NCBI GenBank assembly: GCA_001938485.1
Contig: MQRK01240488.1
Coordinates: forward strand, 1 to 50,033
DNA from: Girardia tigrina
Taxonomy: Eukaryota
DNA: 50,033 bases
Direction: 5' to 3'
Part shown: positions 23 to 49,759 of the stretch, piece after piece
Position numbering within the stretch: the stretch's first letter is position 1
How the letters are laid out: each line of letters begins with the position of its first letter
Notes under the pieces: model-generated
Told to the model about the DNA's origin: nothing
Seen by the model: only the letters and a program-made list of their open reading frames with translations
The model's database searches: none
Program-made: the position numbers and the translations under genes

Positions 23-60
<38 letters not shown>

Positions 61-62
<2 letters not shown>

Positions 63-795
63 TCAAACCCCCGCTGTGGACAAACCACCAATGATCAAAC
101 CCCCTGTGGTCAAAGCACCTTCTACCGATCAAATACATCGCATAAAAGGCATAATGGATCAATCTATGTACAAGAATATCATCGGTACCTTTTGCAAAAG
201 ATAAAATGCCCCGAGGTTGGGTATTTCAACAGGATAATAATCTAAAGTACACGGCCAAAACAGTACAGGATTTTTTCAAATAAAATTCGTGTTTTGAAGT
301 GTTCATCGCAAAGTCCGTATTTAAATCCTATTCAGCATATTTTGGAAAACATTGATCGTCATTTGAAAGACAATAAGCCCAAAATAAGAACGAGATCTAC
401 GAAAGGATTCAAGATATTTGGAGCAACATTCCTTTGGATGTGATTAACAAATTGGTCGACTCAATACCTGATCGTTGTAAAGCAGTTTTAGCTTCGAAAG
501 GTTAAGCTATAAAATATTAATAAAATTTACAATTTCTATCAAATTTTGTCAAAAATATTTGTTTTTTAATAAAATTTTAAATTGTCCAGAGACTTTTGCA
601 CGGGTTAAAATTTGAAAATTGAATGTTCGCCATGAAAAATATTAGCAGAATTAAAAAAAAAAGATTTATTTAGCGTAAAAGCTTATAAAAAAAATTATAT
701 ATCTGGTCAAAATTTAAGCTTGCCATCTTATAAACTCATGGCTTAATTGAATAAATTGTTTTTTTTTACTGTCCACAGACCTTTCCACACTACTG
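61..795 (+). mobile_element. Tc1-type (DD34E) transposon 3' remnant, frameshifted
   Basis: Broken frames read IHRIKGIMDQSMYKNII, QQDNN, QSPYLNPI and IWSNIPLDVINKLVDSIPDRCKAVLASKG..KY*; the element ends ...CCACACTACTG|TA (TIR plus TA target). Confidence 0.8.
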
Positions 796-1700
796 TATTA
801 AAACATTAATATTAAAAAATGTAACGTAAAGCCTGATGATGATGTATGAAACATTGACACTTTTCAGTAATTAATTTCTTAGACAAGATTTAACTAGATT
901 ATTTTATCACATATATAATCAAAAGATTAAATAAATCATCGTAGTTCTATTTAAAAGGTGAACATAAGTAGCAACTGGTCATTAATGAAAAACTGAAACT
1001 GAAGTGATAATAAGAGCTCAGACTGAACGGAAGTCTGATAATAATAGACTCCTTATATTTTCATCAAGTTGATCGTATCAGTGACATTTTGATTTTGGTT
1101 AAAAATACGTATTAAAAAGTTTAATACTATGCTATGAGTTTCTTTCTAATAAAAATTAATTAAATAAAACTTCTGAAAATTCATAAGATTTATCAGATGA
1201 GAAGATGAGAAATTATTTTAAAATAAATTATTATAAATAGTTTATAATCTTTTCTTTACCTGAATAATCAAAACATAACATTCATAGACTACCTAATAAT
1301 TTATAAATGTTCCATTATAAATAAAAAACTGGTGATGTATTTATAGGTCGTAGTATTTAAAATTTTGTATTCAAATAATTTATTTGTTTGAAATTTATTT
1401 GTTGGGAAATATTTTGACATCTAATTGAAAACTTTTAAATAACTATTACACATCAAAATGTTACCATATATAATCATATATATGAAAATAGAAAAATTTT
1501 CATTTCTTCTGTTATATTCCTTTTAAGTAATAGATTCCCGGGCCATATGAATATAAATTTTCAATATTTAAAATTATAGTTCTCTGAAAAAGAAATTTAC
1601 CATTAATTATTATATTGAGTCTTACTTTACTGAAAATGCATATATTTCAACAACAAATATAATTTAAAAATCTATTAAAATAAATTAATTTAATAATTAA

Positions 1701-2003
1701 CATGTTGTCGCACATGACGGCTATAGCCGTCAAATTTTTAACAATCAGTAGACAAATAACGGTTGTAGCCGACTTACATTTTTCATTAATAAAAACAGAA
1801 CCATAGATAGTACAACGTCTACTAATGTATTAATGCGATGTATTAATGTATTGCGACTATAACCGTCGAGAGTTTTCCTTAAAAAAATTTAAGGATATGT
1901 GTGATGATTTTCGATTTCAAATATGTAACTGATGCTTATTTTCCTATGCTAATATATCATATTTCTGGCAACGATCTTGAAAAAAGAAGTGTGCGGCAAC
2001 GGG
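1701..2003. mobile_element. piggyBac-type MITE
   Basis: TTAA at 1697-1700 and 2004-2007; imperfect TIRs CATGTTGTCGCACA / TGTGCGGCAACGGG; internal palindromic GACGGCTATAGCCGTC-like motifs. Confidence 0.75.
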
Positions 2004-3768: not shown

Positions 3769-4883
3769 TTTATTGCATTACATTAAGTCAAATCCTTGTA
3801 CTTATTACGTTAAATTTCATGATCATAACTCAATGCTGTAAATCCTCTTCAAAAATTAAAAAACATAAATAGTGACAACAAATATATTTTTTAATTCATG
3901 GGATTTTAATGTTTCATTATATCAATAATGTGTAACAAATGATTAAAACAAAACATAATGATATAAAGATAAAAATACAAGAATATTTAAGAAAATTGTT
4001 TCAAAAGTGATTTGAAAGAGTAAGATATTCTAGAAAAGATAAAAATATTCAAAATGAGAGTGAGAAACAATTAGGAATTTTCTGGAAATACAAAATATTT
4101 GTAGCTAACTTGTGGAAAATATATAATGTTTATCATAAACATGACTTACATGTGTCATTTGCAATTTCTAGACTCGTATAGAAAAACAAACTACAAATCT
4201 TTCAACGTCACTCTGAAAACATGATTTCAGAAATGTGATACTTAATGAGCGTTAGATCCAGAAAAAATGTTGTGTCTAATAAAAACGCATAAATAGAAGC
4301 AACTATAAAATGATTTAATTTACATAATTTATAATAATTGTAAAAGATAAATATAAGAAAATAAATTTAGGAACCTAAATAAAAAACATTAAAAGAAATA
4401 AATAATTTGATAATACTTTGCAAATTGATATATTTTGTTCTTAATTTATTACAATCAATACTTCAATCATGCGACAGGTGCATCCGTCTCACATCAACAT
4501 ATTCTCAATTAGTTTGACTATCAACGTGTTAACTAACCAAAATTAATTTAATTTATAAAATAAATGTTTAACAAATCAAAAATATCTCTAGATAGGACGT
4601 TTTCTTAAGTATTTCTTCTTTGATTTATAAACTAAATTTAATATTAAAGATGAAATATTTTAGCTAAAACGTTATTCTAAATCAAACCGGTGTTTTGTGA
4701 GTCGATGTAATTCAAAAGCAATCGATTGATGTAGCATCGTCTTGAAAGAGTCATGATATTCTCGACAATTACATCGCTGAAGTGGTTTGGTGTTGTACAA
4801 ACAAATGTTATTTAAAACATCATGTAAACGTAAACAGTAAAAATTAAAAAAAATATGTATCATAAAAAGAAAGGCAAAATTAC

Positions 4884-5125
4884 TTTCAAACAGTTTTGGT
4901 GGACATATTTTAGAGTTCCAGAACAGTAGCAAGGAGAAATCAGTAGATCCGACTGAGTATTTTTTGACAAATGACAAAATCTACACATTGGGTCACTTAA
5001 GATCGATCCATTGCTGTAAATACTGTTATCGTGTTGGTCGTCGATACTTTTATCTGGTGAACCGATTGAGTCTTGGTGATTTTGTAATTGTAAATTTGAA
5101 ATTGTTTTAGGCAGGAAGCATTTTT
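4884..5125 (-). CDS. MARCH-family (RING-CH/RINGv) E3 ubiquitin ligase, internal exon
   Basis: The exon is bounded by TTCAG| and |GTAATT and translates KCFLPKTISNLQLQNHQDSIGSPDKSIDDQHDNSIYSNGSILSDPMCRFCHLSKNTQSDLLISPCYCSGTLKYVHQNCLK, matching RING-CH C-x2-C...PCxCxG(S/T)xKYVHxxCL. The closing W...CxxC exon was not found in the window. Confidence 0.9.
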
Positions 5126-5669
5126 CTGAATTAGATAAAATAATATAAAATCAATGAATCAAACAAGATAGTGTTAGGTATTTTAGACATCCCATGCTTA
5201 TTATTGATAACATTTATTGTTCTTAGGCTTTTTAATAATTTTTTAATCGAAAATAAGCTATTAAACACAATATATGCGAAAAAAACTTTACATAGTCCTG
5301 AAAACTTAAACAATTAAAACTCAATAACTAAGATTTGTTATAACACGAATAAAAAATTATTTATTGTGAGCAAAATTGTAAAAATTTCAGCCAAAAAGTT
5401 TCATTTAGAAAGTTACTGATTTGGATTCAAGAAAATAAAAATCAAGTATATACACTTATTGATTTAAACATAACATAAAATTTGGTTCTTCCTCTGTTGG
5501 TCGAAACTATTGATTTGAAAATGAAAAAGATCCCAATGTAATTTCAGAAGTACTGAAGTTCAAAGATGTTGCCTATTTAAAATTTGATAAAACATCCCAT
5601 CTCCAAATAATATCTAAACCAACTTTGCAAAGAAATGATTACTCATCTATCATCAATATTTCAAAATGA

Positions 5670-14147: not shown

Positions 14148-14333
14148 ATGGAACAATCAAGCGGGAACCCGGGAAATGACGAACATTCCACTAAACCTGT
14201 TTTGGAAAAATTTAAAACGAAATCTAAATCGGTTAAAGAGAGAAATATATTTTCCCGAATTTTTCATAAAAAAACACCGAAAGAATCCAAATTTACTATG
14301 ACGAAAAATAAAAACGTAAAGGGAACCATTCAA
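14148..14333 (+). CDS. Profilin exon 1 (Lys-rich N-terminal extension; alternative ATG at 14298)
   Basis: Runs from ATG to CAA|GTATCG; a 52-bp intron to AAG|TTT joins it in phase 0 to exon 2. Confidence 0.6.
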
Positions 14334-14385
14334 GTATCGAATTTGGTTTTCGCTTATTCATAAATTACTATTTTTGTTGCTGAAG

Positions 14386-14562
14386 TTTGCTGCCGATGCC
14401 AATTGTGAAGTATGGAAGAAAATTGTGGATAATAGCATAATAGGAACGAAACTCATTGATAGTTGTGTACTTTGTACAAAAGAGGGTCAAATTTTGATGT
14501 GTAATCCTCAGAATTATACGCCGTCACTGGAACAAATGGCAATCATAATCGATGGATTTGAA
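14386..14562 (+). CDS. Profilin exon 2 (N-terminal half of the domain)
   Basis: FAADANCEVWKKIVDNSIIGTKLIDSCVLCTKEGQILMCNPQNYTPSLEQMAIIIDGFE resembles the profilin pattern W..YVD..L.GT......I...G...S.EE...I..GF; donor GAA|GTTCGT. Confidence 0.85.
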
Positions 14563-15251
14563 GTTCGTTTGTCATTAATTGTATGAAATAATTGATGTTT
14601 TTATTTCATCGATAATTTTCTAGGAAGACAACTTTAAATTTTTGGAATTTCAAAAATTTAAATAGAAAAAGTTAGATTTTGTTTGAACATCCTCAAGATT
14701 ATTAAATTTAGACGCTGACATAGGAATCAAAATTTTCTATATTACACGTTTTCCAAAAAGTGTTTAAAGACCAACATGATAACAAACTTATTTTTTTTGA
14801 AAAATAATTTTTGAAAATTTTAAACCTATATACCCTGGGGTATTAAATAATTCTTATATCAATATTTTATTTTCCTTTATAAATTTAAAATTAAACTATC
14901 GTAATTAAATACTTAATCATTTGGTCAAAATTTTGTTTAATAAATTAATTTTAATTTTTGTTTATTATTTTCGTTATGATAATCGACACTACAATACAAC
15001 TTTTCTTCTTCATGTGCCGTATAATTTGCAGCTAATGATTAATCACATTTAAGTAGTTTAGTTTCAATTTATTTAGCTGTCAAAAAATTATCAAATGTTA
15101 TCATTAAGTATTTTTCATGTAAAAGTTACAAAATACAAAATCATTTTAATATATACCTTGTCTTTTCATTGTACGCTTTGTTTTTAGTAAATCAGAAAAA
15201 ATTGTTTAATTTAGTTTTATGTTAGGAAGTTACAAAACAGTCACTTAAGAA

Positions 15252-19694: not shown

Positions 19695-19741
<47 letters not shown>

Positions 19742-22700
19742 NNNNNNNNNNNNNNNNNNNNNNNNNNNNNNNNNNNNNNNNNNNNNNNNNNNNNNNNNNN
19801 NNNNNNNNNNNNNNNNNNNNNNNNNNNNNNNNNNNNNNNNNNNNNNNNNNNNNNNNNNNNNNNNNNNNNNNNNNNNNNNNNNNNNNNNNNNNNNNNNNNN
19901 NNNNNNNNNNNNNNNNNNNNNNNNNNNNNNNNNNNNNNNNNNNNNNNNNNNNNNNNNNNNNNNNNNNNNNNNNNNNNNNNNNNNNNNNNNNNNNNNNNNN
20001 NNNNNNNNNNNNNNNNNNNNNNNNNNNNNNNNNNNNNNNNNNNNNNNNNNNNNNNNNNNNNNNNNNNNNNNNNNNNNNNNNNNNNNNNNNNNNNNNNNNN
20101 NNNNNNNNNNNNNNNNNNNNNNNNNNNNTACGATGGCGCACGGGATCCGTGTCAAAACAAAACTGTCATGTTTTCTTTGTTTAATTTTCCATCATCACTT
20201 GAGCCCCCGCCGAAGAATGCGGAGCATGGTGGTTGTTGCATTGTGGAGGGCTGCTGGAAGTAGGAGGGGTGCGAGAATAAATATTCCTCGTAACGCGGTG
20301 TGTTGCAGTGTTGTGTTTTTCATGTTGGTGTGACTGTTTGCGTGGGGTGTGTTGTGGAGGTGTGATGGTGTGGAGTAGTAGTTGCGTGATGTTGTTGTTG
20401 TGGTGGTGTGTGGTTTCTGTGTGATCTGTTGCTCTGTGATGTTGGGAGCGTGTGTTGTAGTTGTGTTGAGGGTGTGAGGTCGTTGCTCGTTTCTTGGTGT
20501 TGTCACGGAAACAAAGCGGTCGTATGATCTTCGTTTGAGATGATTTTCTAGTTGTCTTCGTGACTAATGGACGCTTTGACGTTGTAGCTTTCTTTTTGGG
20601 GGAGTTGTTGTTGTCCGGCTTTGGCTTCGTTTCGTCCTGGATGAACTCTTCCAATTGCAGGCAAGGCTTGAGGTTGCAAATATTCACGATGATCTCCTTG
20701 CCATGTACCAAAAGTTTAGCTGTGTTGTTATCTAGTACGATGGTTAGGAGCTTATGTTGTCCAGTGTAGCGACTTTCTAAAGATATCGCGGTTTCCTTTT
20801 GGAACCAAACCAACTTTGAGGTCACAAGTTCTTTCGGGACAAAGATGTGCTGTCCCTCTGGGTTTGGTGGTGTTCTGTCGGCTTGCAAAAAGTGTTCACG
20901 CACCGNCCGCCGTTAACATCTCATCGTTTCTTCGTGCTTCGTTGAAGGGAGGTTGTTTAGAGAGGTGTTTGAGCCGAAGACCATTTGTGCGGGCCAGGTA
21001 CCATATCTGCTATGAGGAATGTTTCTCCAGCCTAGCAAAATGAGTGGTAACTGCTTCGCCCAATCATTTTTCTGTGCTAACGTTCTGAATAAGTTCTTCA
21101 GGGTACAGTGGAATCGTTCTATCAGGCCGTTGGTTTGCGGTTGGTACGCGGTGGTCTTGATTTTCTGGATGCCCCATCGTTGAGTGAGGTCGCTTAATAA
21201 CTCTGACTCGTATTGTCGCCCCTGATCTATTATGATCCTATTCGGAATGCCGAAACGAGAAATCCAGTTGTTGACGAATATTTCAATAATGGTGTCAGTG
21301 ACCAATTATCTGAGTGGGAACGCCTCGGGCCACCTCGTGTTCCTGTCTAGGATGGTAAGGATGTACTAGTAGCCATGTGACATGGGAAGTGGTCCGACAA
21401 TGTCCATATGCACCGTGTCAAAACGACTGCCGGTAGGGAACGTCAGTATTGACGATTTGGTGTGCTTCGTGACCTTATTTTTCTAGCACTGAAAACTGGT
21501 GCGAGACCAAAGAGTAATGTCTTTCCGCATGAACGACCAAATGACTTTGTTTCTTATCAGCTGGTAGGTGGCCTTTGAGCAAGGGTGTGTTGAGTTGTGA
21601 ATTACCTGGAAGGCTTGAACCCGTAGATCCTGGCCCAGCACTGGTCGGAGGCACCCCGGGAGCGACGTGTCATAATACACATTTCTTTTTTTGATTGACA
21701 GGATTTTGAAGGAGCTGAGATCTTTCAAGCTGGGTGAATACTGCTCCAAGACCTCTGTGGTGAACAACGGCTCAAAGTCAAGACTCATTATGTCAGCTCT
21801 AGAAAGGCAATCTGCCATTACATTGTCGGATCCTTTGATATGTTGTACTTTGATGTTGATCTGGGACAAGTAACTGATTTGGTGTTGTTGTCATGGAGAT
21901 GAATTTTTCATCGTTAGATAGAAAGTTAGGGGTTTTTGATCCGTGTAAACAGTAGTAGGCTGGGCGATGATGAAATGCTCGAAGTGACGAACGGACATGT
22001 ACAACTCTAATATTTCGCGGTCGAAGGCCGAGTACCGCGTCTGCGGTGAAGATAGCTTGTGTGAAAAGAACTCTATCGGTTCTGGTTTGTCTCCACGAAT
22101 CTGCATGAGCCCTTCACCGATGGCAATGTTCGATGAATCGGTTTTCAAGGTGCAACGGGAGATTGCTGTCGGGAAAATGTAGCTAGTTTGTCGCGAGCAT
22201 ATCCTCCTTGACCTATTAGAACACGGTGTCAGCTACGCGTGGCCAGGAGATTTTGGATCGTTTCGGACCAGTAGAAAGTGCGATAAGTGGGGTAAGTGTT
22301 CCGGACAGGTTGGGTATGAATTGTCTGACATAATTAACCATTCCTAAAAAACTACGGAGAACCATGATGTTCTCTGGACGAGGAAAGTCTAGAATGACTT
22401 TTATTCTGCTATCCAGTGACCTTACCCCGTCTCTGGAAATATTGTGGTCAAGTAAATCCACCTTCGGTTAGAAGAATTGACATTTGTCGAGCTTAATGCG
22501 AAGGTTGTGATCATGAAGCCTCGTCAGAACTTCGAATAAGTGTTTTTTGTTCATCATGGTTCATGGAGGCAACAATGATGTCATCGACATATGCGGCAAC
22601 GTTGCTGAGCCCATTAAAAACTATGTCAATGTGCCTTTGGAATGTTTCCGACGCATTTCGAAGCCCGAACTCATATAGAGGCAGGTACTTATATAGACCG

Positions 22701-25104
22701 AATAGCGTAGTGACGGTGGTTTTTGGAATTGATGCCTCATCCATTGGAATCTTTTGGTACGCCTTACTCACGTCAAGTGACGAGAATACTGTACACCCTG
22801 AAAAACGCTGAAGAATGTCAGTTATCAACGGCATGGGGTATGAGTCAGGTATAGTGACCTTTTTGACTCCCCGATAGTCCCCGCAGATCCTAAGTGATCC
22901 ATCTTTCTTTTTGACGATTTGGAATAGAGCAACCCACGGAGAGGAGGAGCGCCGGATGATACCATCTGCCTCCAATTCCCATAATTCTTCAGCAACTTGT
23001 GTTCGGATCACTTGTGATAGTTACCTACGGCATTGATGAACTGGAGCACAGTTCGTGATGGAGATTACGTGTGTTGATACAAAAGTTGTAGGCTTGTCGG
23101 CATTGGCGTCATCCAGCAGTCCTGGAAATTGCTCGCGAATCTGTCTGGTGGTGTCGGTTTCCAGGGTGTTGATCAAACGTTCTGTCGTGGTCGTCGGCGG
23201 GACTGCTGATTCTTGTCGGTAGTTGTTGTCGATGTTGAGACATACCTTGGCCAAGAGAGTTTGAGTGCTGCACTCGACCAAGATCTTGAAGTGTTAAAAA
23301 AATCGGTCCCTAGGATGGGTTGTGTCACTCCGACAATGGTGAATGTCCAAGTGAATTGATTTCTCAATTGGTGCAACGTGATCGTGAGCTGTACAGTGCT
23401 GTACGGGTGGACGGTGGTGCCGTTAGTGGCGCTGAGGTACTGCGAGAGTCACTTCAATTGAGACCTGAACGTGCGAGGAATAATAGAAACGGTGGATCCG
23501 GTGTCGACAAGAAAGCGAAGGTCGCTATTGATCGGCGTTTTCACTCGGGCCTCAGATGTGAAGATGCCGCAGTAGTTATTTCTGTCCACCTCGCTTGCCA
23601 CCGGAACGATGGGTGATACTATTTTTTTACTCTTGAAGTGGAAGCAACCGAGAGCACAATCCTTGGAATTCCTACCGAATTTGGCTTGACAGATGCACAC
23701 GTCAGTCATTTGAGGTTCGGATCCATCGCACGGGAACGTGCAACCGGGTTGGCATTTCTTAGCTGCTTTTTCACGAATCGACGGTAAAAATAACACAAGA
23801 CGATAGTGGTCTTCATGAATAAACCGAATAGCGGGGTTGGCGCTCCTCCAGGACATCCGACGACTGATATACATACAGCATGACTCTGCGATCCCGGGTC
23901 AATGCATTACTGAGCGGCTCGGTTTCCACTAGTGAGCAATCACGGTTGCCGCTGATAGCGATCAGACTGGCTTGCAGAGCCGCTATCTGTTCGGATAGTG
24001 TGGTTACCTCCGTGAAGTGTACGTGTTGGGGTGTTCTCGAGCTCGGTGTGCGGCTGCTGTTGCTGGTTGCCGACATGATCGGGTAGCAGTGACCCTTGTT
24101 GTGCCCAACGGTTTCGGCGATTTAGACCGCGATCTTGGCGAACTCCACGAGTGGTAGATTGTCGAAGGCGGTAAGTATGGCCCGTTATGTGTCCGGTATA
24201 GCTAGGAGGAAGAGCTTCCGCATCAGCAGCTGATCTGCATCATCATTGACCAGTGCCGGGTTGAGCGCATGCAGATCGGTTGTCATCTTGTTCAGGAACT
24301 GAGTGGGCCTGATGGCTCCCTCGGCTGAGTCCTGAAATATCGCTCTAAGTGCGCATCGAAAGTCTGTGAGTGTGCCTTCATTAAGTGGTTGCACAACTGA
24401 TCGTATGGTCGGTCATGTGCCATGATCACCGGAAGATCTTTGTTTATTACCAGCAATTGATCGACCCGTAATGCGGCTGTGAGGTGTTGAAACCGCACAT
24501 GTTGGCTCCTCATGGTTTTCAGGCGGAACTCCATTAGTCCAAGACAGGTTCGAGGTGATCTGTAGTCATCTAGAAAAAACGGGGACGTCGGTAACGCCAA
24601 CGAGTGCACTGCGTTTCGCTCTTTCAGCTGTGGTATGCTGGTTTCAGAGAAAAGTTCAGGTCCCTCATCGCGATCACCACCGCCTAAAAGTGCCACGTGG
24701 CAAGTGATTGTGGTGTCGGTCACGATCCCGTACTGCCTGAAAGAGAGGTGAGAGCGTAACGGTTAAAACCCCTTATAAAGTGGGACTGGATGTCCCGACT
24801 GACTGGTGAAGTGATTTATGAGGTGTTCGATAAAATAGTCGGTGGACAATTTGAGTGTGGTGACAATGTCCTCTTCAGTGTTTATTGTTATTGTGGTATG
24901 TGCTTAAGTTATTGTTTTCAGTGTGTTTTGGATGTGGTGTGTGCTTATTTGATCGTTAAGTGCTGTGTTAGAGTAAATTTGTTTAATGTGAGGCGTGTGA
25001 GTGTTTGTTGCGGTGCATGCGTGGTGATTGTAGTGAGTGTAAGTGTTGCAGCAACCGCGTTTTAAAAAAACATTCAAAATTGCTGACCTGTGTTGGATCG
25101 GTTG

Positions 25105-25122
25105 ATCCTACTTCTGTCACCA
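25105..25122 (-). promoter_or_regulatory. Primer-binding site (tRNA-Leu-like)
   Basis: TGGTGACAGAAGTAGGAT lies 1 nt inside the LTR end and is close to the tRNA-Leu-type PBS TGGTGTCAGAAGTGGGAT. Confidence 0.75.
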
Positions 25123-25123
25123 A

Positions 25124-25633
25124 TGTGGTACCGACAGCCGGACCGAATGGCGACGGCCGGCACCTCTTAGACGTGCCGGGACTTGGTTCTCGGAGAGATC
25201 GCCACATCGGTTTGACGAAGTCTAGTTGTCGATAGGGTCTGGTGATCATCGGTCGATATGCCATAAGATGGAGGTCCCNNNNNNNNNGTTCCGCCTCCGA
25301 GAACGCCGATACCGCTCCGTTCGTCGAAATACGACACGAGTGTGCAACCAGCGAGACTGTGGGGATCCGTCATGCATCACCAAATTGTGCGAGGCGATGG
25401 CGCACGGGATCCGACCGATTGGAGCCGGTACTACATTGTGCGGTGTCCGTCAATATCAGCATCGTGTAAAAACATCCGAATGACGATTAATATTCAATAT
25501 TGATCGAAAATATATAAAAAGGAACGTTCATCATTTCTATTCAAAACGCAAAATGATTTATTTCATTTAAAATTGTGCCATCAAATATTATTAAAACAAA
25601 ACTGTCATGTTTTTTTGTGTAATTTTTGATCAC

Positions 25634-27229: not shown

Positions 27230-27935
27230 GATTGTTCATGGTGATCGCTTCATCAACAACATCGTTACACAAGATGAAACCACGGTGAGCTTGTATGTGC
27301 CTGAGAGCAAGCATCAATTTTCTGATTGATGCTTCCCCTGTGAAAAAGCTCCCCGAAAACTTCGAAGCGGCAACTCACACAAGCGAGCAGTAATGCTGAC
27401 TATGTTCTAGGATTCCCATGGCATTATTAAAATTGATTTCCTTGCGAAAAGACTGGCAATGAATAGTGAGTATTATGTTGAATTACTTCGCGTTGTGAGA
27501 AAGTCTAGTAGGCTGCCAAGAGGGATTCTATTGTGGCTCCTTCAAGACAATGTACCCATTCACACTTCGCGAGTAACTTTGACTGCTGTAGATGACTGTG
27601 GCTTTCAGTTGGTTTCCCACCCCCCTATAGCCCTGACCTATCCCCAAGTGATTTTCCGTTGTTTAAATACCTAAAGAAACATTTGAAAGGAGTCCACTTT
27701 CATTCAGTTGATGTCCTCAAGGAGAAAGTCTTTGATATTCTCAATTCTTTGCCTCCCATTTTTTTACAAAAATGCGTTCTCTGAGCTTGTTGCTTGCTGG
27801 CGCAAGTGTGTTGATATACACGGCTCATACATTGAGAAATGATTTACTTTGATGTCATGTACTGATTCTGAAAAAATAAAGTTGATTGGACTTTGCTTTC
27901 TTGTCGAATCTAAGGACTTATGGATCGCGCCATAT
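27230..27935 (+). mobile_element. Mariner (DD34D-type) transposase catalytic-domain remnant
   Basis: IVTQDET...PESK; MNSEYY; LLQDNVPIH; HPP/YSPDLSPSDF across a frameshift; GSYIEK*. Confidence 0.85.
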
Positions 27936-30425: not shown

Positions 30426-31900
30426 TTAGAAAACTATCCGCCATATATGACGGCGGCGCTGAATTTTCGACTTTGAAAATTTCTGTTTTAATTTTTAAAT
30501 CGTAATTATTACAATTTATTATTTCGAATTCTGTGTTGATTTAACAGTCAGTCAGTTAAAGAGGCTCCCGGAGCCTTTCGGCAAAGGCGCTGTACAGATA
30601 AAACCATCTCGATGAGGACTATGCAGAGTTATCTCAACTTTACTCGGATTCATTCACTGTTCTTCCACTATTTCGCATTTTGGGGCTATCCATAAATGAC
30701 GTCACGCGATTTTTGCAGATTTTCAACCCCTCCTCGCTATCATCACACTTTGTCATAAAATTCTGTCCCCCTCCAGCGTTACGTCTTTTATCGACTGTCC
30801 CTTTATCAGTGTTAGGAACGACATTGGTCGTATAAATGTCTCCTGTTTCTTCCGACATTCAAATAACGAAAAACATACACCTCGATTAAAATAATTTATT
30901 AAATGACAATTTTTGAATTTTCACACAAATTTTTTTGTTTATTTAAACAACTGTTTTTATTTGAGAATATTTTTAGTATTTCTATTTTTAATCGTTTATT
31001 ATAGATATGGATATAGATATATATATTTAATAACATTAATAATTATTTAAATGTTGAGAATTAAAATATCTTATAAATTATACTTATAAATCTTACAATC
31101 AGCATACATATGATCCTAGTAAAATTTAAGCTTGTTCGACAAACCGTGAATGAGATGATACCGAAATTTTGCAAATTTAACCTAAATTGATTTTTAGAAA
31201 TATAATTAGTAAATAAGTGATGGATATCGTCATTTATCAAATATATTAGTATTTTCATTAAAATTTTGACAAAATTCCTTGTAGGAATCATCAAAATCGT
31301 CATTATTCGAAATCAGTGTTGATTTAACAATTTAACGACTTGTACGGTTGTCAATCGATTTCATCGGCTTCCGGGCGTCTATCGGCAAAGGCGCTGCACC
31401 GACAGAATTGTATTGATGCGGGCTATCCAGATTTATCACGTCCTTAAATGGATTCACTCCGGTTCCTCCGCAATTTTGCATTTTACTTGTTGATATTATT
31501 TTTTAATAACGAAAATTTGTAATTTCTACAAAATTGATTTTCAGCGATAAAAGTTGCAAATAAGTGATAAAAATCGTCATTTATCAAATATATTAGTATT
31601 TTCATAAAAGTTTTATCAAAATTCCTTGTAGGAATTTATTTATTATCATTCAAATCGTCATTATTCGAAATCTGTGTTAATTTAACCATTTAAAAACTTG
31701 TAAGGTTTTCGATTGATTTCATCATCTTCCAGATATCTATCCGTGAAGGTGCTGTACCGAAAAAATTGTATTGATGCGGGTTATCCAGATTTACCACGTC
31801 CGTAAATGGATTCCCTCCGGTTCGTCCGCAATTTCACATTGAAAAGCGTGACTGACAAACAAACAAACAAACCCACTTTTTAGACAAATATTATATATAT
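30426..31900 (-). mobile_element. Non-autonomous Helitron with three diverged internal repeat units
   Basis: Minus-strand 5' end ATATATAATATTTG...(GTTT)n GTCAGTCACGCTTT; 3' end has a CCGCC-n9-GGCGG hairpin 8 nt before CTAA|T (CTRR); related units at about 30523-30680, 31210-31483 and 31560-31840. Confidence 0.7.
30682..30790. mobile_element. MITE end nested in the Helitron
   Basis: GGGGCTATCCATAAATGACGTCACGC terminus, typical of common metazoan MITEs; it interrupts repeat unit 1. Confidence 0.5.
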
Positions 31901-32079: not shown

Positions 32080-32560
32080 CCAAGTAACCATGGCGACGGT
32101 TACGGTTCACTTAGCAATGGTTACGGTTACCATAGCAATGGTTCCAGTTCACTTGGCAACGCTTCACATGGGTTCATGATACCATAGCAACGGTTTCGAT
32201 CACTTTGGAAACGCTTCTGATTGGCCCTTGGTACCCTAGCAACGGTCGCGATCACCTTAGGAACGGTTCTGATTGGCTCCCGGGTCCATATCAACGGTTC
32301 CCATTTCCTTAGAAACGGTTCCGATCACCTTAACAACGTTTCTGATTGATTCCCGATACCTTGGTAACAGTTCCCATCACTTTGTAATCATCGATAACAC
32401 CTTACAATACCTTGACAACCATCATCTTTACCTTCAAAATCATCGAAAACAACTTAATGACCAATCAAATCACGTTGACAGTCATCTAAAAAGCCTTAGA
32501 AACCATCACCGTTACCTTAAAAATCATCAAAAACATGTAAAAACGATCAAAACTACACAA
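32080..32560. repeat. Degenerate 21/31-bp tandem array with X-box-like and CCAAT motifs
   Basis: Units end ..CC(A/T)TAGCAACGGT; GTAACCATGGCGAC and GTTACCATAGCAAT are present; CTGATTGG is interleaved. Confidence 0.8.
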
Positions 32561-33789
32561 AAAATGTGCTAATTAATACTGCACAGTGCTGAACTGTGCC
32601 GAACTGAGCATATACATGCTGCACATGTGTTAATCAATACTTCACATGTGCTAATCGAAATAACACATTTACAAATGTATAGAGCACTGTGCTAAAAATA
32701 CTACATATGTTCAAGTGTGGACAATCAATAAATTCACAATTGTGCAAAGTGCACATTATTTTTATTGATCCAATATGCAATTAGAATTTTTATATATTTT
32801 TTTGTTTTTAATATAATAGAGTTTAAAGTTTATAGTGGTGTATAACGTCCCAATGGTGAGACAGAATGCCCATTGTGTGTCGAATGTCCATAGTGTAAGA
32901 GGGCGAAGAAAGCGAAATTTAAAAATTCTGTTTGAACACATGTATAGGAACCCATGTTCTAATGTATCACTTGTAGTAAATAGACGCAAGGCGGTACTTT
33001 GTATTTGTATTTAAAATTGTAGATTCTCTAAAGGAAGAAAAAGGCGGGAATTCGAATTGCAGATTCTCTAAATAAACTCCCTTTACGGTATAAAACCCTG
33101 TCAATACGTTTTACACTTTCTAGGCTAGTCCAGGCTTGCCAAAAGCACACCACTTTATTCTTACTCAATGGAAAATGTAAGAAATGTTGAATAATGGGCT
33201 TGATCCATCCAGTTTACCTACTATATCCCAAATATTAGTATATAATCTATTGCAGTCATATATGATTATGGTCAACAAATTAATACTATGGATGTGTATG
33301 AATATACGCGATAAATAGTCTGTTGTGTAATAGAAAGCAATGTAATTGCGAAAACATCCAACTTTTTAGATGACTGTGATGTTTTCCATCATGTATACTA
33401 TTATATGTTATATATTATTGTTAGGGAGTTTTTTTGGTGAACTTTAAATTTTTGGAAATTTTTAAATTGAAAATCATATATATAGTTAAGATAAGTCAAA
33501 ATAATGTTTTACTAATTAAAATAATTTGTTTAATAAAATGAACTATTAAAGAAGTTTTTTGTATGTAAAATTAATTTTTAAAATATTGTAAGTTCTATAA
33601 AAAATGAATATTTTTTAATAGATCGAATGATTAAAGAGTTTACTATATGTAAAAATTAGTTTTAAAAAATAATTTAATTTCTGTAAAATATGAATATTTT
33701 TTAAAAGTTTGAATGATTAAAGATGTTTATTTTTAAGAAAATTAATTTATAATAGAAGTTACAAAAATATGATTAAATAAAAAAAACAG

Positions 33790-34545
33790 ATTGCTTGTTC
33801 AACTTCATCGAATGCTTCGAATCGGCGGCCTTTCAAGAAGTGTTGCATGAATCGGAAGAGGCCATAGTCGGAGGGAGCGCAATCAGGTCTGTAAGCAGGA
33901 TGCGCCAGGATTTCCACTCCATCCAACTCTTGGAACTTCCCTGTCGTATGCTTGGCAGTATGCGGCTTGGCATTTTCTTGCTGAAGCAGTGCACGTTTTC
34001 GGTTGATTAAGACAGGGTACTTCTTGAGCTTCTCGTAGACACGATCCAGCTGTTGACAATAGAGCTCTGCATTGATGGCTTTACCGTTCTGAACCAACTC
34101 AAAGTGTACGACTACCTCAGAGTTCCACCAGGCACACAACATGATTTTCAAGCCAAATTGATCTTGTTTTGGAACTGACGGCGTTGCTTGACCCGGTGGA
34201 ACCCATCGCTTGTCTCGCTTGTGGTTGACAAAGTAGACCCAATTCTCGTCCGACGTTTCGTTTCTAAAAGCGGTCATCTTGTGGATTCTGTAGCAGTGTT
34301 CGGCAAATTTGGACTCTTTTATCAGCCTGTGCTTTGGTGAGTTCATGTGGATCTTGACGCGGTTTCTCGTGCACAAAGTCGAGCTGCTTCAAATGCCAAT
34401 GTATGGTTGACTTGCCATCTCCAAGCCTAAATGCCAAATCGTGAGTGCTTGACGAAGGCTTCGTGTCCAACTCTGCTTGCAAGTCATCGTTATCCAGTTT
34501 TGTTGGTTGACCAGAACGATAACTGTCATTCAAGTCAAAGTTGCC
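33790..34545 (-). mobile_element. Mariner (DD34D-type) transposase pseudogene, 5'-truncated
   Basis: GNFDLNDSYRSGQP, PHELT, TSDENWVYFVN, KIMLCAWWN, LQQENAKPH, HPAYRPDCAPSDYGLF. Confidence 0.92.
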
Positions 34546-34628
34546 ATGGTTACGGGTCTAACCTTCCCCCCCCAGGAAGTATCTAGTGAGATGGGAATTG
34601 TGTGTCGAATGTCAATTTTTATCTTACT

Positions 34629-36215: not shown

Positions 36216-36258
<43 letters not shown>

Positions 36259-37450
36259 CTTAAATACATTAAAATACTTAATATACAATAAAATATTAAT
36301 TATTTATAAAAAAATCAATTTTTCCATAGATATTGGAAAAGCACAAAAAAATATTTACACCTTTATTTCTGTTTAAATAAACACTATAACTTTGATTATT
36401 CTCTTTTTTTTATGAAATAAAAATTATTTTATATTTTATAAACATTAAATCGTGAATTTTCACACGCAGGCTTGCAGACAATATTTTTTCAATCTAAGAC
36501 AGAATTATTTTTTAAAAAATAAATGAAAAACGAGTCATCGACGGTAATCCATCGACCGAGTTCTTTGGATTTTAAGTAAGGCGATCAATTTCCTCTTTTG
36601 CCGAGGACAAAGAGTACTCATCCAAGACCTATGTCAACAACAACAGCGCCACCAACCCTATCGACCGGCAGCGGGTGTCGACCGACTATTATTCTTCGAG
36701 TTATGAGTACCCCACTGTAGCGGACCCTCAAGGGTGTTGTCGGCGGTTGCAATTACGAAAACGACTCGGTTATCTCGCCGAATATGACGGCGTTGTTGGT
36801 GCTAAATGCTACGAACCCCATATACATTGTTTGAAACACATGTTTTTAGCTTATCCAAATTTTAATAAGGACTTTACACTCAAAAAAATGGAAAAATCAA
36901 GCCATAAAGCTTATGCATAATTGGTAGCACCCACGGTCAAAGGGCTACGGTCCAAAAAAACTTATATGGAAAGAAATTCAAGATATGTTGACTACTAAAA
37001 AGCAAATTAAGCCGAAATTTCAAAAATGGATAAATTTTTTAAGCAGTTTGGATATGGGTTTAAAATAAAGGAAAGGAATTAATAAAAAATGCCGATTTCT
37101 TGTCTCGAAGGAAATGTAAAAGCAGTGTACATTTTCAAATGAAAGATGAATAGACCAAACCAAGGAAATTAAAAACAAAAGTTTTGACTCTTATTACAAA
37201 ATCAAAGGGTTAGCAATGACAAAAGAACCTTAAAGAAATTAGTGATGCATATGAAACATTGCATCACTAATTTCTAAAAACAATTTTAAAACCAAAAACT
37301 TTAAACAAAAATAATAAAAGTACTTTAAAAAAATAATAAATTCTCGAGGATAGAAACATACAAGTTACTATATCATGCGGGTACTAAAAAAGTTTATGAT
37401 TACATCAAAACTGATTTAGAAAAGGAAACTAGTAAATCAAAAAATTAAAA
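34629..37450 (+). mobile_element. Old, highly decayed Gypsy element (gag knuckle, RT, RNase H) with later insertions
   Basis: CYGGRKEGHVG knuckle remnant; FPIPNIED; FDLENAF; VYTNDII; LRSFV.VCNYY..FI; LAYPNFNKDFTL; NADFLSR. Confidence 0.7.
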
Positions 37451-44209: not shown

Positions 44210-44989
44210 CTTTGTTAAGAAAGATAACAATTGATTTTTTTAAATTGTGTTGTGAGAATCTGGCGCACTCTTAAAATTTTTGAATATTTAAAATAAGCAA
44301 ATATCTAAAATCAAAAGTTCTTGAAAAAAATTATTAATTCAAAATATCTCTAGTTAATTTTTTAAAAAAAAGTAATTCTCAAAAATAATTTAATGAAATT
44401 TTATTTGCTAAAAATGTAAGTTTGAAATTATTTGTTAAATAATTGATTTTCAAAAAATAATTGATTTTTTTAAATGTGTTGTGAATAACTTTGAGAAGTA
44501 GTTAAATTCCGTTGATTTTGAAATTTATTTTAAACTAAATTTTATAAAATATTGAAATGCAATTCTGTAAAATTATTATATCTAAAAAAATATAAAATTT
44601 ATAATTCAGTATTTTATGTATAATTAATTTGGTCAAAAAGAAAGCAATAGAAAAGTTCCTCAACAAAAATTGTTATTTGTGATAGAAATAAAGTCTTGCG
44701 TTTATGAATTCCATTCTTGATCAAAAACCCAATATCACTATTTGTTGTTTCATAAAAAAATGTTCAAGATATTTTATACTAATCTTATTACAAATAATTC
44801 AACAAAATTATTTAACAGGTAAACAACCTATTAACTGGCAGATTAGGAAATCAGCAAAGAGTACTCCAATATTGGATCACGATATTTGACAAGGAGAAAT
44901 AAAAATAAGTATAACTTAGAGTATCGTCAAAATCGTTATTCTTAACCAATAATGAATGATCTGGGAGATAATTGTCAATAATTTTCGAT

Positions 44990-45943
44990 TTCTGATCAAT
45001 CAATGTATGTTTTGGCTAGAAAGTTTCACGAGACCGGCTCTGTAACCGACAAGAAAAGAAGTGGGCGCCCTAACAATATGAATACCGATGAAAATAAAGA
45101 AAATGTTAGAACTTTCTATCAGAATGCGCCATTAACATCTACAGTTCGTGCAAGTTTTCAGTTGCATATACCACGCACAAGTTTACGTAGAATAATGAAG
45201 GAATCAATGAGAACATCGACATCAGGGACAGAATAATTTGGACCGACGAAGCTTCATTTAAGTTGAATGGTCACGTTAATTTGCATAATGCCGCGTACTA
45301 CTCCACTGGCAATCCTCGTCTGGTATGGGAGACTAACAATCTTTCTTCACGAATTTGTGTGTGGGGAGGAATACGTTCAACGGGTGTGCTGGGTCCATAC
45401 TTCTTTGATGGAACGGTCAATTCTCAGCTATATCTTGACATGCTGCGTGATTTTGCCGTACCTCAGCTTGACACAGATAACGACGTTTGGATGCAAGACG
45501 GTGCTCCCCCTCATTATGGTAGAAATGTACGCGACTTTTTGGATAACACTTTTGAGATGTGGATAGACAGGAGAGGAACCACTGAATGACCTCCACGATC
45601 ACCGGACCTGACACCTTGTGATTATTCAATGTGGGGTATCCTGAAAGAACGCGTTTACTCACAAAATGTTCTAACCATATCCGAGTTGAAGGAAAGAATT
45701 ACTACAGAATTTGCAGCCTTGAACAACGATAAAGACTTGTACCGACGAATCTGTCACTCTGTTCAGAGAAGAATCCAGTTGTGTATTAAATCTGAGGGAC
45801 AACACTTTGAAGACAAGATTTAATTGTTTTCAAGTTTTTGTTTTGAAATTATTATTGTACGCTGATTAAATAAAAGTTGTATCATTTAGAATGTTGTGTT
45901 TATTATTATTAAAACTGGGTAAAGTGACTTATGGCCACCCCTG
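44990..45943 (+). mobile_element. Tc1/mariner-superfamily element (rosa/DD41D-like; D-D spacing counted as 40)
   Basis: KFHETGSV.DKKRSGRP; IIWTDEASF; GPYFFDGTVN; QDGAPPH...*PPRSPDLTPCD; 3' TIR ...TGGCCACCCCTG|TA. Confidence 0.9.
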
Positions 45944-47063: not shown

Positions 47064-47102
<39 letters not shown>

Positions 47103-47106
<4 letters not shown>

Positions 47107-47860: not shown

Positions 47861-48008
47861 TTAACTAATTAATACAATTTAATATTACAATTTTAAATTA
47901 TGTACAAATTTTCAGTTGGAAGAATTGGAAATCAATTTTTATTATGTGTATAATAAATAATCATGTTCAATTTTACAAAATGTGTCAGTAACTCACTGCA
48001 CAGATATT

Positions 48009-48108
48009 GGGGACCTGTTACTTGGTAACCTGTGTTCAGCCAGTCGGACATACCTCCACGTGGTGTCCCTGTGAAACTAGAGCTCTCTTCTCTAAGCTAA
48101 AGTGTCCG
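48009..48108 (+). ncRNA. HDV-like (CPEB3-like) self-cleaving ribozyme
   Basis: P1 GGGGAC (48009-14) / GTCCCT (48065-70) with G1-U wobble; P2 CGGACAT (48045-51) / GTGTCCG (48102-08); P3 ACC/GGT; L3 TCCACGT; P4 TAGAG/CTCTA; J4/2 GCTAA with the catalytic C at 48097. Confidence 0.85.
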
Positions 48109-48352
48109 CAGCTTGCCTTGTTGGGGTGCTGACCAACATAGTACAGAAGGCGAGGACCTGCAATCCACCTCTTTGAAATGCTATCTGAGCGGAATCGTAG
48201 AAACGTCGAAAGGCGGGGCCCATGGTTAGTTGAAGGATGACACCCAATGATACAACCGACTCAGCTCCTTATAGATTCTGAGTCATTATCACAGGTGAGA
48301 GCCACATGAATTCTATCCAGGTTCGTGTGCTGCCACCTTGGGGAGGAGGCCT
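48009..48352 (+). mobile_element. 344-bp ribozyme-headed short retroelement
   Basis: Perfect 14-bp TSD ACTGCACAGATATT at 47995-48008 and 48353-48366; the 5' end coincides with ribozyme G1; GC-rich relative to the flanks; no ORF. Confidence 0.85.
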
Positions 48353-48823
48353 ACTGCACAGATATTAACATTTGATGATTATTGTATCGCTCATATATTT
48401 GATAACTTTCGTCGCCCATTGAAATTAGTTGATGAAGACTTGTTGCTCCTTGAGATGAATGGGTTGTCATCTCCTAAGATATTATCAACAAATTTATTCA
48501 TTTTATACCATAAAATTTGCCTGACTTGAATAAATACCGTGAACAAACCACTGATTATTGATTTATTCGTGTATTACTATTTGTCTTAATAAATGTGTTT
48601 CTTCTGTGGTGTTCATTTACTTTTGACATTGCTTTGATTATATACATATCTCTTTTATTTTATTTATTTTTTTGCAACACAATACAACTAAAATATTTGA
48701 TAAATAAATTACCGGTTCAAGCAAAAAGTCAATATCATTATTTAAAAAAAATAAAAGGTAAAAAAATTAGTTTTCTCTGAATTTTTCTTTTGTACTACTA
48801 AAAATTGAATTCCGGGAACTCAC

Positions 48824-49705: not shown

Positions 49706-49759
<54 letters not shown>

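What the first reader, a model, noticed from the sequence alone, without database searches (positions are those of the whole stretch)
47995..48366. Short ORF-less retroelement that begins exactly at the cleavage site of an HDV-like ribozyme
Seen: a perfect 14-bp TSD (ACTGCACAGATATT) brackets a 344-bp insert. Its first base (48009) is G1 of a full nested double pseudoknot: P1 with G-U wobble, 7-bp P2, P3 ACC/GGT, CPEB3-like L3 TCCACGT followed by GT after P1, P4, J4/2 GCTAA, and an extra GTTAC-TTG-GTAAC hairpin in J1/2. I see no ORF, no poly(A) or simple-repeat tail and no tRNA-derived A/B-box head. Known: HDV-like ribozymes define the 5' ends of R2- and RTE-clade non-LTR elements, and target-primed insertion gives TSDs of this size but usually 5'-truncated copies. 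Inference: this is either a non-autonomous, promoterless SINE-like family released from read-through transcripts by self-cleavage, or a 5'-UTR-only LINE RNA mobilised in trans. The intact TSD suggests a recent insertion. P1 is 6 bp rather than the usual 7.
Basis: partly seen in the sequence, partly recalled or inferred. Interest (0 to 1): 0.88.

Follow-up and report, generated by a model that had tools for sequence, protein, structure and literature searches.

The report
Short retroposon headed by HDV-like ribozyme
A 344-base, gene-less mobile-element copy lies between perfect 14-base target duplications and starts exactly at the predicted cut site of a self-cleaving (HDV-like) RNA fold; LINE-type elements and their parasites are already known to do this, so it is a clean new example, not a new kind.

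Summary
ACTGCACAGATATT occurs only twice in the window (47995-48008, 48353-48366) and brackets a 344-bp, 51% GC insert in 21-28% GC DNA. I coded the published HDV-like ribozyme search descriptor. It matches once on both strands of the 50-kb window, at 48009-48108, so it starts on the first base after the left duplication. In random sequence it matched about once per 120 million positions. Two unrelated metagenomic ribozymes share the same 20-nt core and the same J4/2 letters but have different, fully paired P2 helices. The insert has no ORF over 41 aa on its own strand, no tail, no tRNA-like head and no Rfam match.

Best reading: a target-primed retroposed copy of an RNA whose 5' end was made by self-cleavage. 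That makes it a SIDE/NARTc-like non-autonomous derivative of a ribozyme-headed non-LTR element, here dispersed rather than in rDNA.

Not shown: cleavage itself, a partner LINE, or any second copy. Ribozyme-headed LINEs and their short derivatives are published, so novelty is modest.

The parts
47995..48008 (.). Left copy of the 14-bp target-site duplication (ACTGCACAGATATT)
   Evidence: Exact repeat, only two occurrences in the window
48009..48352 (+). 344-bp insert: ORF-less, tail-less retroposed element, 51% GC in 21-28% GC flanks
   Evidence: No other copy in the window
48009..48108 (+). Predicted HDV-like self-cleaving ribozyme (nested double pseudoknot); predicted cleavage is 5' of G48009
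   Evidence: Only match to the published descriptor on both strands of the window. About 1e-8 per nt in random sequence
48009..48014 (+). P1 5' strand (GGGGAC), pairs with 48065-48070 (GUCCCU); G48009-U48070 is a wobble
   Evidence: The plain MFE fold also predicts this helix
48017..48029 (+). Hairpin in J1/2 (5 bp, 3-nt loop), in the position of the P1.2 peripheral helix
   Evidence: P1.2-type helices in J1/2 speed up large HDV-like ribozymes (PMC4908430)
48045..48051 (+). P2 5' strand (CGGACAU), pairs with 48102-48108 (GUGUCCG), 7 bp
48052..48064 (+). P3 (ACC/GGU) enclosing L3 UCCACGU (48055-48061)
   Evidence: L3 fits the descriptor TYYHCG*Y. CCUCCACGUGG matches 10 of 11 letters of the most conserved R2 ribozyme motif quoted in PMC5035012
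48065..48072 (+). P1 3' strand (48065-48070) followed by J1/4 GU (48071-48072); G48071 can pair with C48057 to give a 1-bp P1.1
   Evidence: The P1.1 pairing partners come from my own knowledge of the HDV fold
48078..48094 (+). P4 hairpin, UAGAG/CUCUA with a 7-nt loop; a sixth pair C48077-G48096 is possible if A48095 bulges
   Evidence: and direct reading. The helix is not flush with J1/4
48095..48101 (+). J4/2 AGCUAAA; C48097-U-A-A fills the CNRA slot, so C48097 is the predicted catalytic cytosine
   Evidence: The same CUAA occurs in the metagenomic ribozymes L004 and L001
48102..48108 (+). P2 3' strand
48109..48352 (+). 3' body of the element, presumed to be what a partner reverse transcriptase recognises. 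Local hairpins at 48258-64/48278-84 and 48293-48338, the latter ending 14 nt before the 3' end
   Evidence: Pair probabilities 0.88-0.99. The whole region is no more stable than shuffles. The function is inferred
48353..48366 (.). Right copy of the 14-bp target-site duplication

Best explanation
The 344-bp insert is a DNA copy, made by target-primed reverse transcription, of a short non-coding RNA whose 5' end was cut by its own HDV-like ribozyme. It most likely derives from a ribozyme-headed non-LTR (LINE-type) element that has lost its coding region, as SIDEs and NARTc have.

Proposed steps:
1. A source copy with no promoter of its own is transcribed as part of a longer host or neighbouring transcript (inferred).
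2. The first 100 nt fold into the double pseudoknot and cleave just 5' of the G that corresponds to 48009, which frees the RNA from upstream sequence (inferred from the fold).
3. The 3' body, with its terminal stem-loops, is recognised by the reverse transcriptase of a 'stringent' partner LINE that needs no poly(A) (inferred; the partner was not found).
4. The partner's endonuclease makes nicks staggered by 14 bp, and cDNA synthesis runs to the very 5' end of the cleaved RNA. The 14-bp duplication and a junction with no missing or extra base are the footprints, and both are visible in the sequence.

Whether this is one member of a repeated family or a single event is open.
For: - A perfect 14-bp duplication brackets a GC-rich insert, with sharp composition steps at both edges.
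- The published HDV-like descriptor matches once on both strands of the window, and that match starts on the first inserted base. In random sequence it matched 1 start site in 1.2e8 nt. If a motif did lie in the insert by chance, only about 1 in 245 placements would put it at base 1.
- All conserved positions are present: G1, L3 U..CG, and C-N-R-A in J4/2.
- The nested helices (-14.5 to -16.7 kcal/mol) plus P2 (-9.2) roughly equal the unknotted MFE of -25.6, so the fold is energetically competitive.
- The 20-nt core is letter-identical to two independent metagenomic HDV-like ribozymes. Both have the same CUAA in J4/2 and unrelated but fully paired P2 helices. One of them sits in a phage-like tRNA array, as theta ribozymes do (PMC10879173).
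- A hairpin in J1/2 is a known activating feature.
- There is no ORF, tail, tRNA head or known RNA family.
- Published precedent: R2 and R2/R1 SIDEs, the latter with 14-bp duplications, and NARTc/TbRIME.
Against: - No cleavage data exist.
- No second copy and no partner LINE were found in any collection I could search, so no covariation among true homologues is available.
- Rfam has no hit even at E<=10. This is weak evidence, because Rfam also misses the descriptor-perfect L004 ribozyme and scores L001 below threshold.
- P1.1 can form only one pair (GU where the two metagenomic ribozymes have GG).
- Four to five unpaired bases separate J1/4 from P4, so the strict stem-P4 descriptor is not met.
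- An alternative AGCU/AGCU pairing in the MFE fold would sequester C48097.
- The unknotted fold energy is no better than shuffles (z = -0.05), and the same holds for the 3' body.
- The two metagenomic comparators were selected by sharing the core, so they support the fold class and say nothing about this element's history.
Confidence: 0.7

Rival explanations
1. A full-length ribozyme-headed LINE inserted here, and a later DNA-level deletion in place removed its coding region. This would leave the 5' ribozyme, a 3' remnant and the original duplication. The short form itself never moved.
For: It explains the intact duplication, the exact 5' end and the missing ORF equally well. No second copy of the short form was found.
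Against: The deletion would have to remove several kb cleanly while sparing both ends. A perfect 14/14 duplication suggests a young insertion, which leaves little time for that. Published SIDEs show that such short forms do propagate. Nothing here separates the two readings directly.
Confidence: 0.12
2. A one-off chimera. During a single target-primed event, a LINE reverse transcriptase jumped from its own 3' region onto an unrelated ribozyme-cleaved RNA, or copied an aberrantly deleted transcript. The result is a unique insert that founded no family.
For: Template jumps by R2 reverse transcriptase onto other RNAs in vivo are documented (PMC3414825). No second copy was found in what I could search.
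Against: This differs from the best explanation only in copy number, and the lack of copies is uninformative because the source genome was not searchable. The insert shows no visible junction signature.
Confidence: 0.1
3. An ordinary 5'-truncated LINE or other retroposed fragment whose first 100 nt look like an HDV-like ribozyme by chance.
For: No Rfam hit. The unknotted fold is no more stable than shuffles. No biochemical data.
Against: The descriptor match rate in random sequence is about 1e-8 per position, and the single match in 100 kb of searched strand falls exactly on the first inserted base. The core and J4/2 are identical to independent ribozymes.
Confidence: 0.02
4. Not a retroposition event at all. 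The 14-bp repeat is a chance or replication-slippage repeat, and the GC-rich block has some other origin, such as assembly error or foreign DNA.
For: AT-rich DNA carries many short direct repeats.
Against: This is the only complex 14-mer repeat of its kind in the window. Its two copies coincide to the base with both composition steps and with the ribozyme start.
Confidence: 0.02

Closest known systems
SIDEs (Short Internally Deleted Elements) of R2, and R2/R1 hybrid SIDEs, in Drosophila (Eickbush and Eickbush 2012, PMC3414825)
   Same: Short and ORF-less. A 5' HDV-like ribozyme defines the 5' end of a co-transcript, and the 3' end is borrowed from a LINE. There is no own promoter. The hybrid SIDEs have 14-bp target duplications and precise 5' junctions. 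The P3-L3-P3' core here matches 10 of 11 letters of the most conserved R2 motif (PMC5035012).
   Different: SIDEs sit at the R2 or R1 sites of 28S rDNA, whereas this insert is in AT-rich non-rDNA (no rRNA hit anywhere in the window). R2 SIDEs end in poly(A). The ribozyme here is compact (100 nt, 30-nt J1/2) compared with the large J1/2 of Drosophila R2. No partner element and no further copies are known.
NARTc / TbRIME / SIDER with the L1Tc ribozyme in trypanosomatids (PMC3383444, PMC4035085, PMC3185411)
   Same: Dispersed, non-autonomous, truncated derivatives of a LINE that keep its 5' HDV-like ribozyme.
   Different: Those first 77 nt also act as an internal promoter (Pr77), and the elements have poly(A) tails and are very abundant in protist genomes. 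I found no sequence relation and no sign of a promoter here.
Ribozyme-terminated autonomous non-LTR elements: R2, RTE, Baggins and others (Ruminski et al. 2011, as summarised in PMC6765202 and PMC7761336)
   Same: An HDV-like ribozyme at the extreme 5' end of a promoterless element that is transcribed by read-through.
   Different: Those elements encode endonuclease and reverse transcriptase. This one encodes nothing.
drz-Agam-2-type large HDV-like ribozymes with a P1.2 helix in J1/2 (Webb et al. 2016, PMC4908430)
   Same: A structured hairpin in J1/2 between P1 and P2.
   Different: The hairpin here is short (5 bp, about -2 kcal/mol) and does not close the whole J1/2. Any effect on rate is untested.
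Minimal / theta HDV-like ribozymes of gut phages (PMC10879173), represented here by metagenome loci L001/L003 and L004
   Same: Identical 20-nt P3-L3-P3'-P1' core, identical CUAA in J4/2, and P1 GGGGAY.
   Different: Phage or bacterial context (tRNA array in L004), J1/4 GG rather than GU, short J1/2, and unrelated P2 and P4. I take the shared core to be convergence or ancient fold conservation and not evidence of shared mobility.
Twister-variant ribozymes at the 5' ends of Schistosoma mansoni non-LTR elements (PMC8501958), and hammerhead ribozymes in schistosome SINEs (PMC6765202)
   Same: A self-cleaving ribozyme defines the 5' end of a promoterless retroposon, including short non-autonomous ones.
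   Different: A different ribozyme class.

Membership tests
HDV-like self-cleaving ribozyme (fold family) | Nested double pseudoknot in the order P1-J1/2-P2-P3-L3-P3'-P1'-J1/4-P4-J4/2-P2', with P1 of 6-7 bp starting at G, P2 of at least 6 bp and P3 of 3 Watson-Crick bp | tested here: met
   Published hdv-looseP4 descriptor as I implemented it. Single match at 48009-48108. Helices listed.
HDV-like self-cleaving ribozyme (fold family) | Conserved letters: L3 TYYHCG*Y, J1/4 RN, J4/2 CNRA with the catalytic C | tested here: met
   UCCACGU, GU, and C48097-U-A-A.
HDV-like self-cleaving ribozyme (fold family) | P4 helix directly flanked by J1/4 and J4/2 (strict stem-P4 descriptor) | tested here: not met
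   Bases 48073-77 are unpaired before P4. P4 is known to be dispensable in some members (PMC3774820), so this does not exclude membership.
HDV-like self-cleaving ribozyme (fold family) | P1.1 of one or two pairs between L3 and J1/4 | tested here: inconclusive
   Only C48057-G48071 can form, and U48072 has no partner. The literature accepts one or two pairs.
HDV-like self-cleaving ribozyme (fold family) | Compensatory changes among homologues | not testable with these tools
   No homologous copy was retrievable. Two ribozymes that share the core have unrelated, fully paired P2 helices, but I selected them by that core.
HDV-like self-cleaving ribozyme (fold family) | Site-specific self-cleavage 5' of G1 | not testable with these tools
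   No biochemical or transcript-end data. The DNA copy beginning at G1 is indirect support only.
HDV-like self-cleaving ribozyme (fold family) | Match to an Rfam HDV-type covariance model | tested here: not met
   No hit at gathering score or at E<=10. The models also miss L004 and score L001 at 26 bits against a cut-off of 44, so sensitivity is poor.
Non-autonomous non-LTR retroposon of the SIDE / NARTc type | Target-site duplication, no coding capacity, ribozyme at the exact 5' end | tested here: met
Non-autonomous non-LTR retroposon of the SIDE / NARTc type | 5' and/or 3' ends shared with an autonomous partner LINE | not testable with these tools
   There is no LINE sharing sequence with the insert in the window, and no eukaryotic genome collection is available.
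Non-autonomous non-LTR retroposon of the SIDE / NARTc type | Several copies with the same ends and different flanks | not testable with these tools
The protein-route search was empty.
R2 element or R2 SIDE | Site-specific insertion in 28S rDNA | tested here: not met
   No rRNA match anywhere in the window. The flanks are 21-28% GC unique DNA.
Classical SINE (Pol III head from tRNA, 7SL or 5S) | tRNA-, 7SL- or 5S-derived 5' head with an internal promoter | tested here: not met
   ARAGORN found none. There is no Rfam match in 47900-48450 at E<=10 other than noise.
Retrozyme / Penelope-like element with hammerhead ribozymes | Hammerhead motif(s) | tested here: not met
   No hammerhead family hit.

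The most novel reading that the evidence does not exclude
The insert is a recently active member of a dispersed, multi-copy family of minimal retroposons in an animal genome. Such a family would have no promoter, no ORF, no tail and no small-RNA head. It would depend on read-through transcription plus HDV-like self-cleavage for its 5' end and on a stringent, non-rDNA LINE for copying. That would be a SIDE-type parasite that has left the rDNA niche in which SIDEs were described as rare.
Probability: 0.4. Interest if true: 0.55.

Novelty: new member of a known kind. Interest (0 to 1): 0.42.

Why it matters
If this is a family, it would be a compact natural example of the minimum an RNA needs to be copied by a LINE: a 100-nt self-cleaving head and about 240 nt of 3' recognition sequence. 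It would also extend SIDE-type parasites from rDNA to dispersed sites in an animal genome. In addition it adds an HDV-like ribozyme variant for comparison, with a one-pair P1.1, a short J1/2 hairpin and spacer bases before P4. As a single copy, it is simply a very clean footprint of ribozyme-defined 5' ends in target-primed insertion.

Tried and rejected
- Rfam at gathering score on the whole window, and at E<=10 on 47900-48450: no ribozyme family, only noise.
- Plain MFE folding of the head and of the 3' body: no better than shuffles. This is uninformative for a pseudoknot.
- Search for further copies:
  - blastn of the insert against the window found only itself.
  - Exact-pattern scans of viral contigs with the core, the 3' end and the 5' end found nothing.
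  - A scan of prokaryotic genome contigs with the 5' end found nothing.
None is a copy of the element, three are genuine unrelated HDV-like ribozymes, and the rest are chance matches in other sequence, at least two of them apparently coding.
- Protein route to other copies, through the 51-aa antisense ORF: no candidate.
- Host identification:
  - A mariner remnant finds unnamed metagenome proteins (up to 78% identity) and bdelloid-rotifer proteins (60-69%). This does not fix the host.
  - A weak profilin-like exon finds nothing.
- A MAFFT alignment of the three ribozymes was out of structural register at the 3' side, so I compared the helices by direct parsing and did not run formal pair counting.
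- The papers by Webb 2009, Ruminski 2011 and Webb and Luptak 2011 are not held. I took the descriptor from the RNArobo supplement instead.
- Rejected: terminal inverted repeats or a DNA transposon (the ends are not complementary, by direct reading), an rDNA-specific R2 or R1 insertion (no rDNA), and a Pol III SINE.

Full report
**What is there**

The 14-mer ACTGCACAGATATT lies at 47995-48008 and again at 48353-48366, and nowhere else in the window. The match does not extend by a single base on either side. Between the two copies lie 344 bp (48009-48352) at 51% GC. The 300 bp on either side are 21% and 28% GC, and the window as a whole is about 26%. I listed all exact direct repeats of 14 nt or more within 1 kb of each other. 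This pair is the only complex one outside a 358-bp tandem array near 31 kb; the rest are (TA)n or A/T-rich strings. The two copies therefore behave as a target-site duplication around an inserted, compositionally foreign block.

**The ribozyme fold**

I took the search descriptors used by the Luptak and Brejova groups for HDV-like ribozymes from the RNArobo supplement (PMC4870747, Figs S11 and S13). They require:
- P1 of 6-7 bp beginning with G and closing on a pyrimidine.
- J1/2 of up to 50 nt.
- P2 of at least 6 bp.
- A strictly Watson-Crick 3-bp P3.
- L3 = TYYHCG*Y, J1/4 = RN and J4/2 = CNRA*.

I implemented them directly, and on both strands of the window they match once. The match starts at 48009, the first base after the left duplication, and ends at 48108. 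The parts are:
- P1 48009-14 / 48065-70, with a G-U at the cleavage-site pair.
- A 30-nt J1/2 holding a 5-bp hairpin, 48017-21 / 48025-29.
- P2 48045-51 / 48102-08 (7 bp).
- P3 48052-54 / 48062-64.
- L3 UCCACGU.
- J1/4 GU.
- P4 48078-82 / 48090-94.
- J4/2 AGCUAAA, with C48097 in the catalytic-cytosine slot.

**Is it chance?**

In first-order Markov sequence with the element's own composition, the descriptor gave one start site in 1.2e8 nt. With the window's composition it gave none in 8e7 nt. A loosened descriptor (P2 of 5 bp, freer L3, longer spacers) again found 48009, plus one AT-only artefact at 36385-36485. The 18-nt core has no second match in the window even with three mismatches. On top of this, the match begins on base 1 of the insert, out of about 245 possible placements. 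Chance is not a serious explanation.

**Energetics and weak points**

The nested helices (P1, the J1/2 hairpin, P3, P4) evaluate to -14.5 to -16.7 kcal/mol, and P2 as a duplex to -9.2. Together these are about the same as the best unknotted fold, -25.6. The unknotted MFE also contains P1.

Weak points:
- P1.1 can form only one pair (C48057-G48071).
- Four to five unpaired bases (48073-77) lie between J1/4 and P4, so the stricter stem-P4 descriptor is not met.
- An alternative AGCU/AGCU pairing could trap C48097.
- Ordinary fold z-scores are null, as expected for a pseudoknot.

**Independent ribozymes with the same core**

None is a copy of the element.
- L004 satisfies the full descriptor.
- L001 and L003 carry a 51-nt minimal version with a 5-bp P2 and no P4.

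All three have P1 GGGGAY/GUCCCU and the same CUAA in J4/2. Their P2 helices are unrelated in sequence but fully paired: ACUAUUA/UAAUAGU and AGGCA/UGCCU, against CGGACAU/GUGUCCG in the window. L004 is a phage-like contig with a tRNA array, which is the setting described for theta ribozymes (PMC10879173). Rfam scores L001 at only 26 bits against RF02682 and misses L004 altogether, so Rfam's silence on the window carries little weight. These comparators show that this exact core belongs to real members of the fold class. Because I chose them by that core, they are not evidence about the element's own evolution.

**The rest of the insert**

On its own strand the longest ORF is 41 aa; the longest on the opposite strand is 51 aa. 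There is no A-run or simple repeat at the 3' end, no tRNA-like gene, no Rfam family and no terminal inverted repeat. The 3' body (48109-48352) is not globally more stable than shuffles. It does have two confident local hairpins: 48258-64 / 48278-84 (pair probability 0.99) and a compound stem-loop at 48293-48338 (0.88-0.96) that ends 14 nt from the 3' end. These are plausible handles for a reverse transcriptase that recognises its own 3' untranslated region, but that is inference.

**Mechanism**

The sequence shows three things directly: the staggered-cut footprint (14 bp), a 5' junction with no lost or added base, and a fold whose predicted cleavage site is that junction. The remaining steps are inferred:
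- A promoterless source copy is transcribed by read-through.
- The RNA cuts itself free 5' of G1.
- A partner 'stringent' LINE binds the 3' body and copies it by target-primed reverse transcription to the very 5' end.

This is how R2, RTE, Baggins and L1Tc are described as working (PMC6765202; PMC7761336), and it is how their short derivatives are thought to spread.

**Comparison with what is known**

The closest published kind is the SIDE (PMC3414825). SIDEs are short elements made of an R2 ribozyme plus the 3' end of R2 or R1. The R2/R1 hybrids have 14-bp duplications and precise junctions, and their ribozymes self-cleave in vitro. The core here (CCUCCACGUGG) matches 10 of 11 letters of the motif quoted as the most conserved in R2 ribozymes (PMC5035012). 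SIDEs, however, live at fixed sites in 28S rDNA, and this window has no rRNA match at all.

The dispersed analogues NARTc, TbRIME and SIDER (PMC3383444, PMC4035085) belong to trypanosomatids. Their ribozyme doubles as a promoter, and they have poly(A) tails. A hairpin in J1/2 recalls the activating P1.2 helix of drz-Agam-2 (PMC4908430).

The authors of the SIDE paper call non-LTR SIDEs rare, so a dispersed animal SIDE-like element would be a worthwhile addition. It would not be a new principle.

**What could not be done**

- The small antisense ORF has no relatives in the protein collection.
- Pattern scans of viral and prokaryotic collections were empty.

The central question, family or single event, and the identity of the partner LINE are therefore untested. 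A blank in these collections says nothing about the source genome.

The host is unidentified. A mariner remnant is closest to unnamed metagenome proteins and, among named ones, to bdelloid-rotifer proteins at 60-69% identity. Given how often mariner elements transfer between species, this does not fix the organism.

**Verdict**

It is a new member of a known kind, of moderate interest.

In my private working I recalled a few short motifs from memory: a Pol III B-box consensus, a fragment of a fly profilin, and residue numbers plus a guessed L3 of the HDV ribozyme. All letters used in calls came from tool outputs.

Noticed in passing
window 20129-25600 (- strand), between N runs 19742-20128 and 25279-25287: GC-rich (43-47%) degraded Ty3/gypsy-like LTR retroelement. 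Reverse transcriptase, RNase H, integrase zinc-binding and integrase core domains lie on separate ORF pieces, so pol is broken several times. I did not count stops and frameshifts separately.
   Followed up: partly
window 33762-34557 (-), 44982-45820 (+), 27411-27781 (+), 246-440 (+): Four mariner/Tc1-like transposase remnants, each split over frames. The first has Transposase_1 and DDE_3 hits. Its nearest named relatives are bdelloid-rotifer proteins (60-69% identity), with unnamed metagenome proteins up to 78%. The last two were recognised by eye only.
   Followed up: partly
window 31184-31834 and 32098-32377: A 358-bp tandem repeat (1.8 copies, 82% match) with a more distant partial copy at about 30533-30655, followed by a 52/21-bp minisatellite.
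   Followed up: no
window 4863-5150 (-) and 14320-14583 (+): Host-like exons: a RING-variant (MARCH-type) domain (E 3e-10) and a weak, sub-threshold profilin-like stretch. The profilin-like piece has no relatives in the protein search.
   Followed up: partly
L004 (metagenome contig Ga0265301_10062584), 1-2867: Phage-like contig carrying at least six tRNA genes on one strand, a descriptor-perfect HDV-like ribozyme at 1750-1828 (-) and a sub-threshold twister-P1 match at 798-852 (-). That is two ribozyme classes in one tRNA array.
   Followed up: partly
L001:231-281 (+), identical in L003: A 51-nt minimal HDV-like ribozyme (5-bp P2, no P4) that Rfam scores at only 26 bits against RF02682.
   Followed up: partly
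window 36385-36485 (-): The only other hit of the relaxed ribozyme descriptor. Its P1 is AAUAUU in AT-rich DNA, and I judge it a low-complexity false positive.
   Followed up: no
window 24-67, 19698-19741, 36219-36257, 47067-47104, 49709-49754: Recurrent (TA)n microsatellites, one of which abuts an assembly gap.
   Followed up: no
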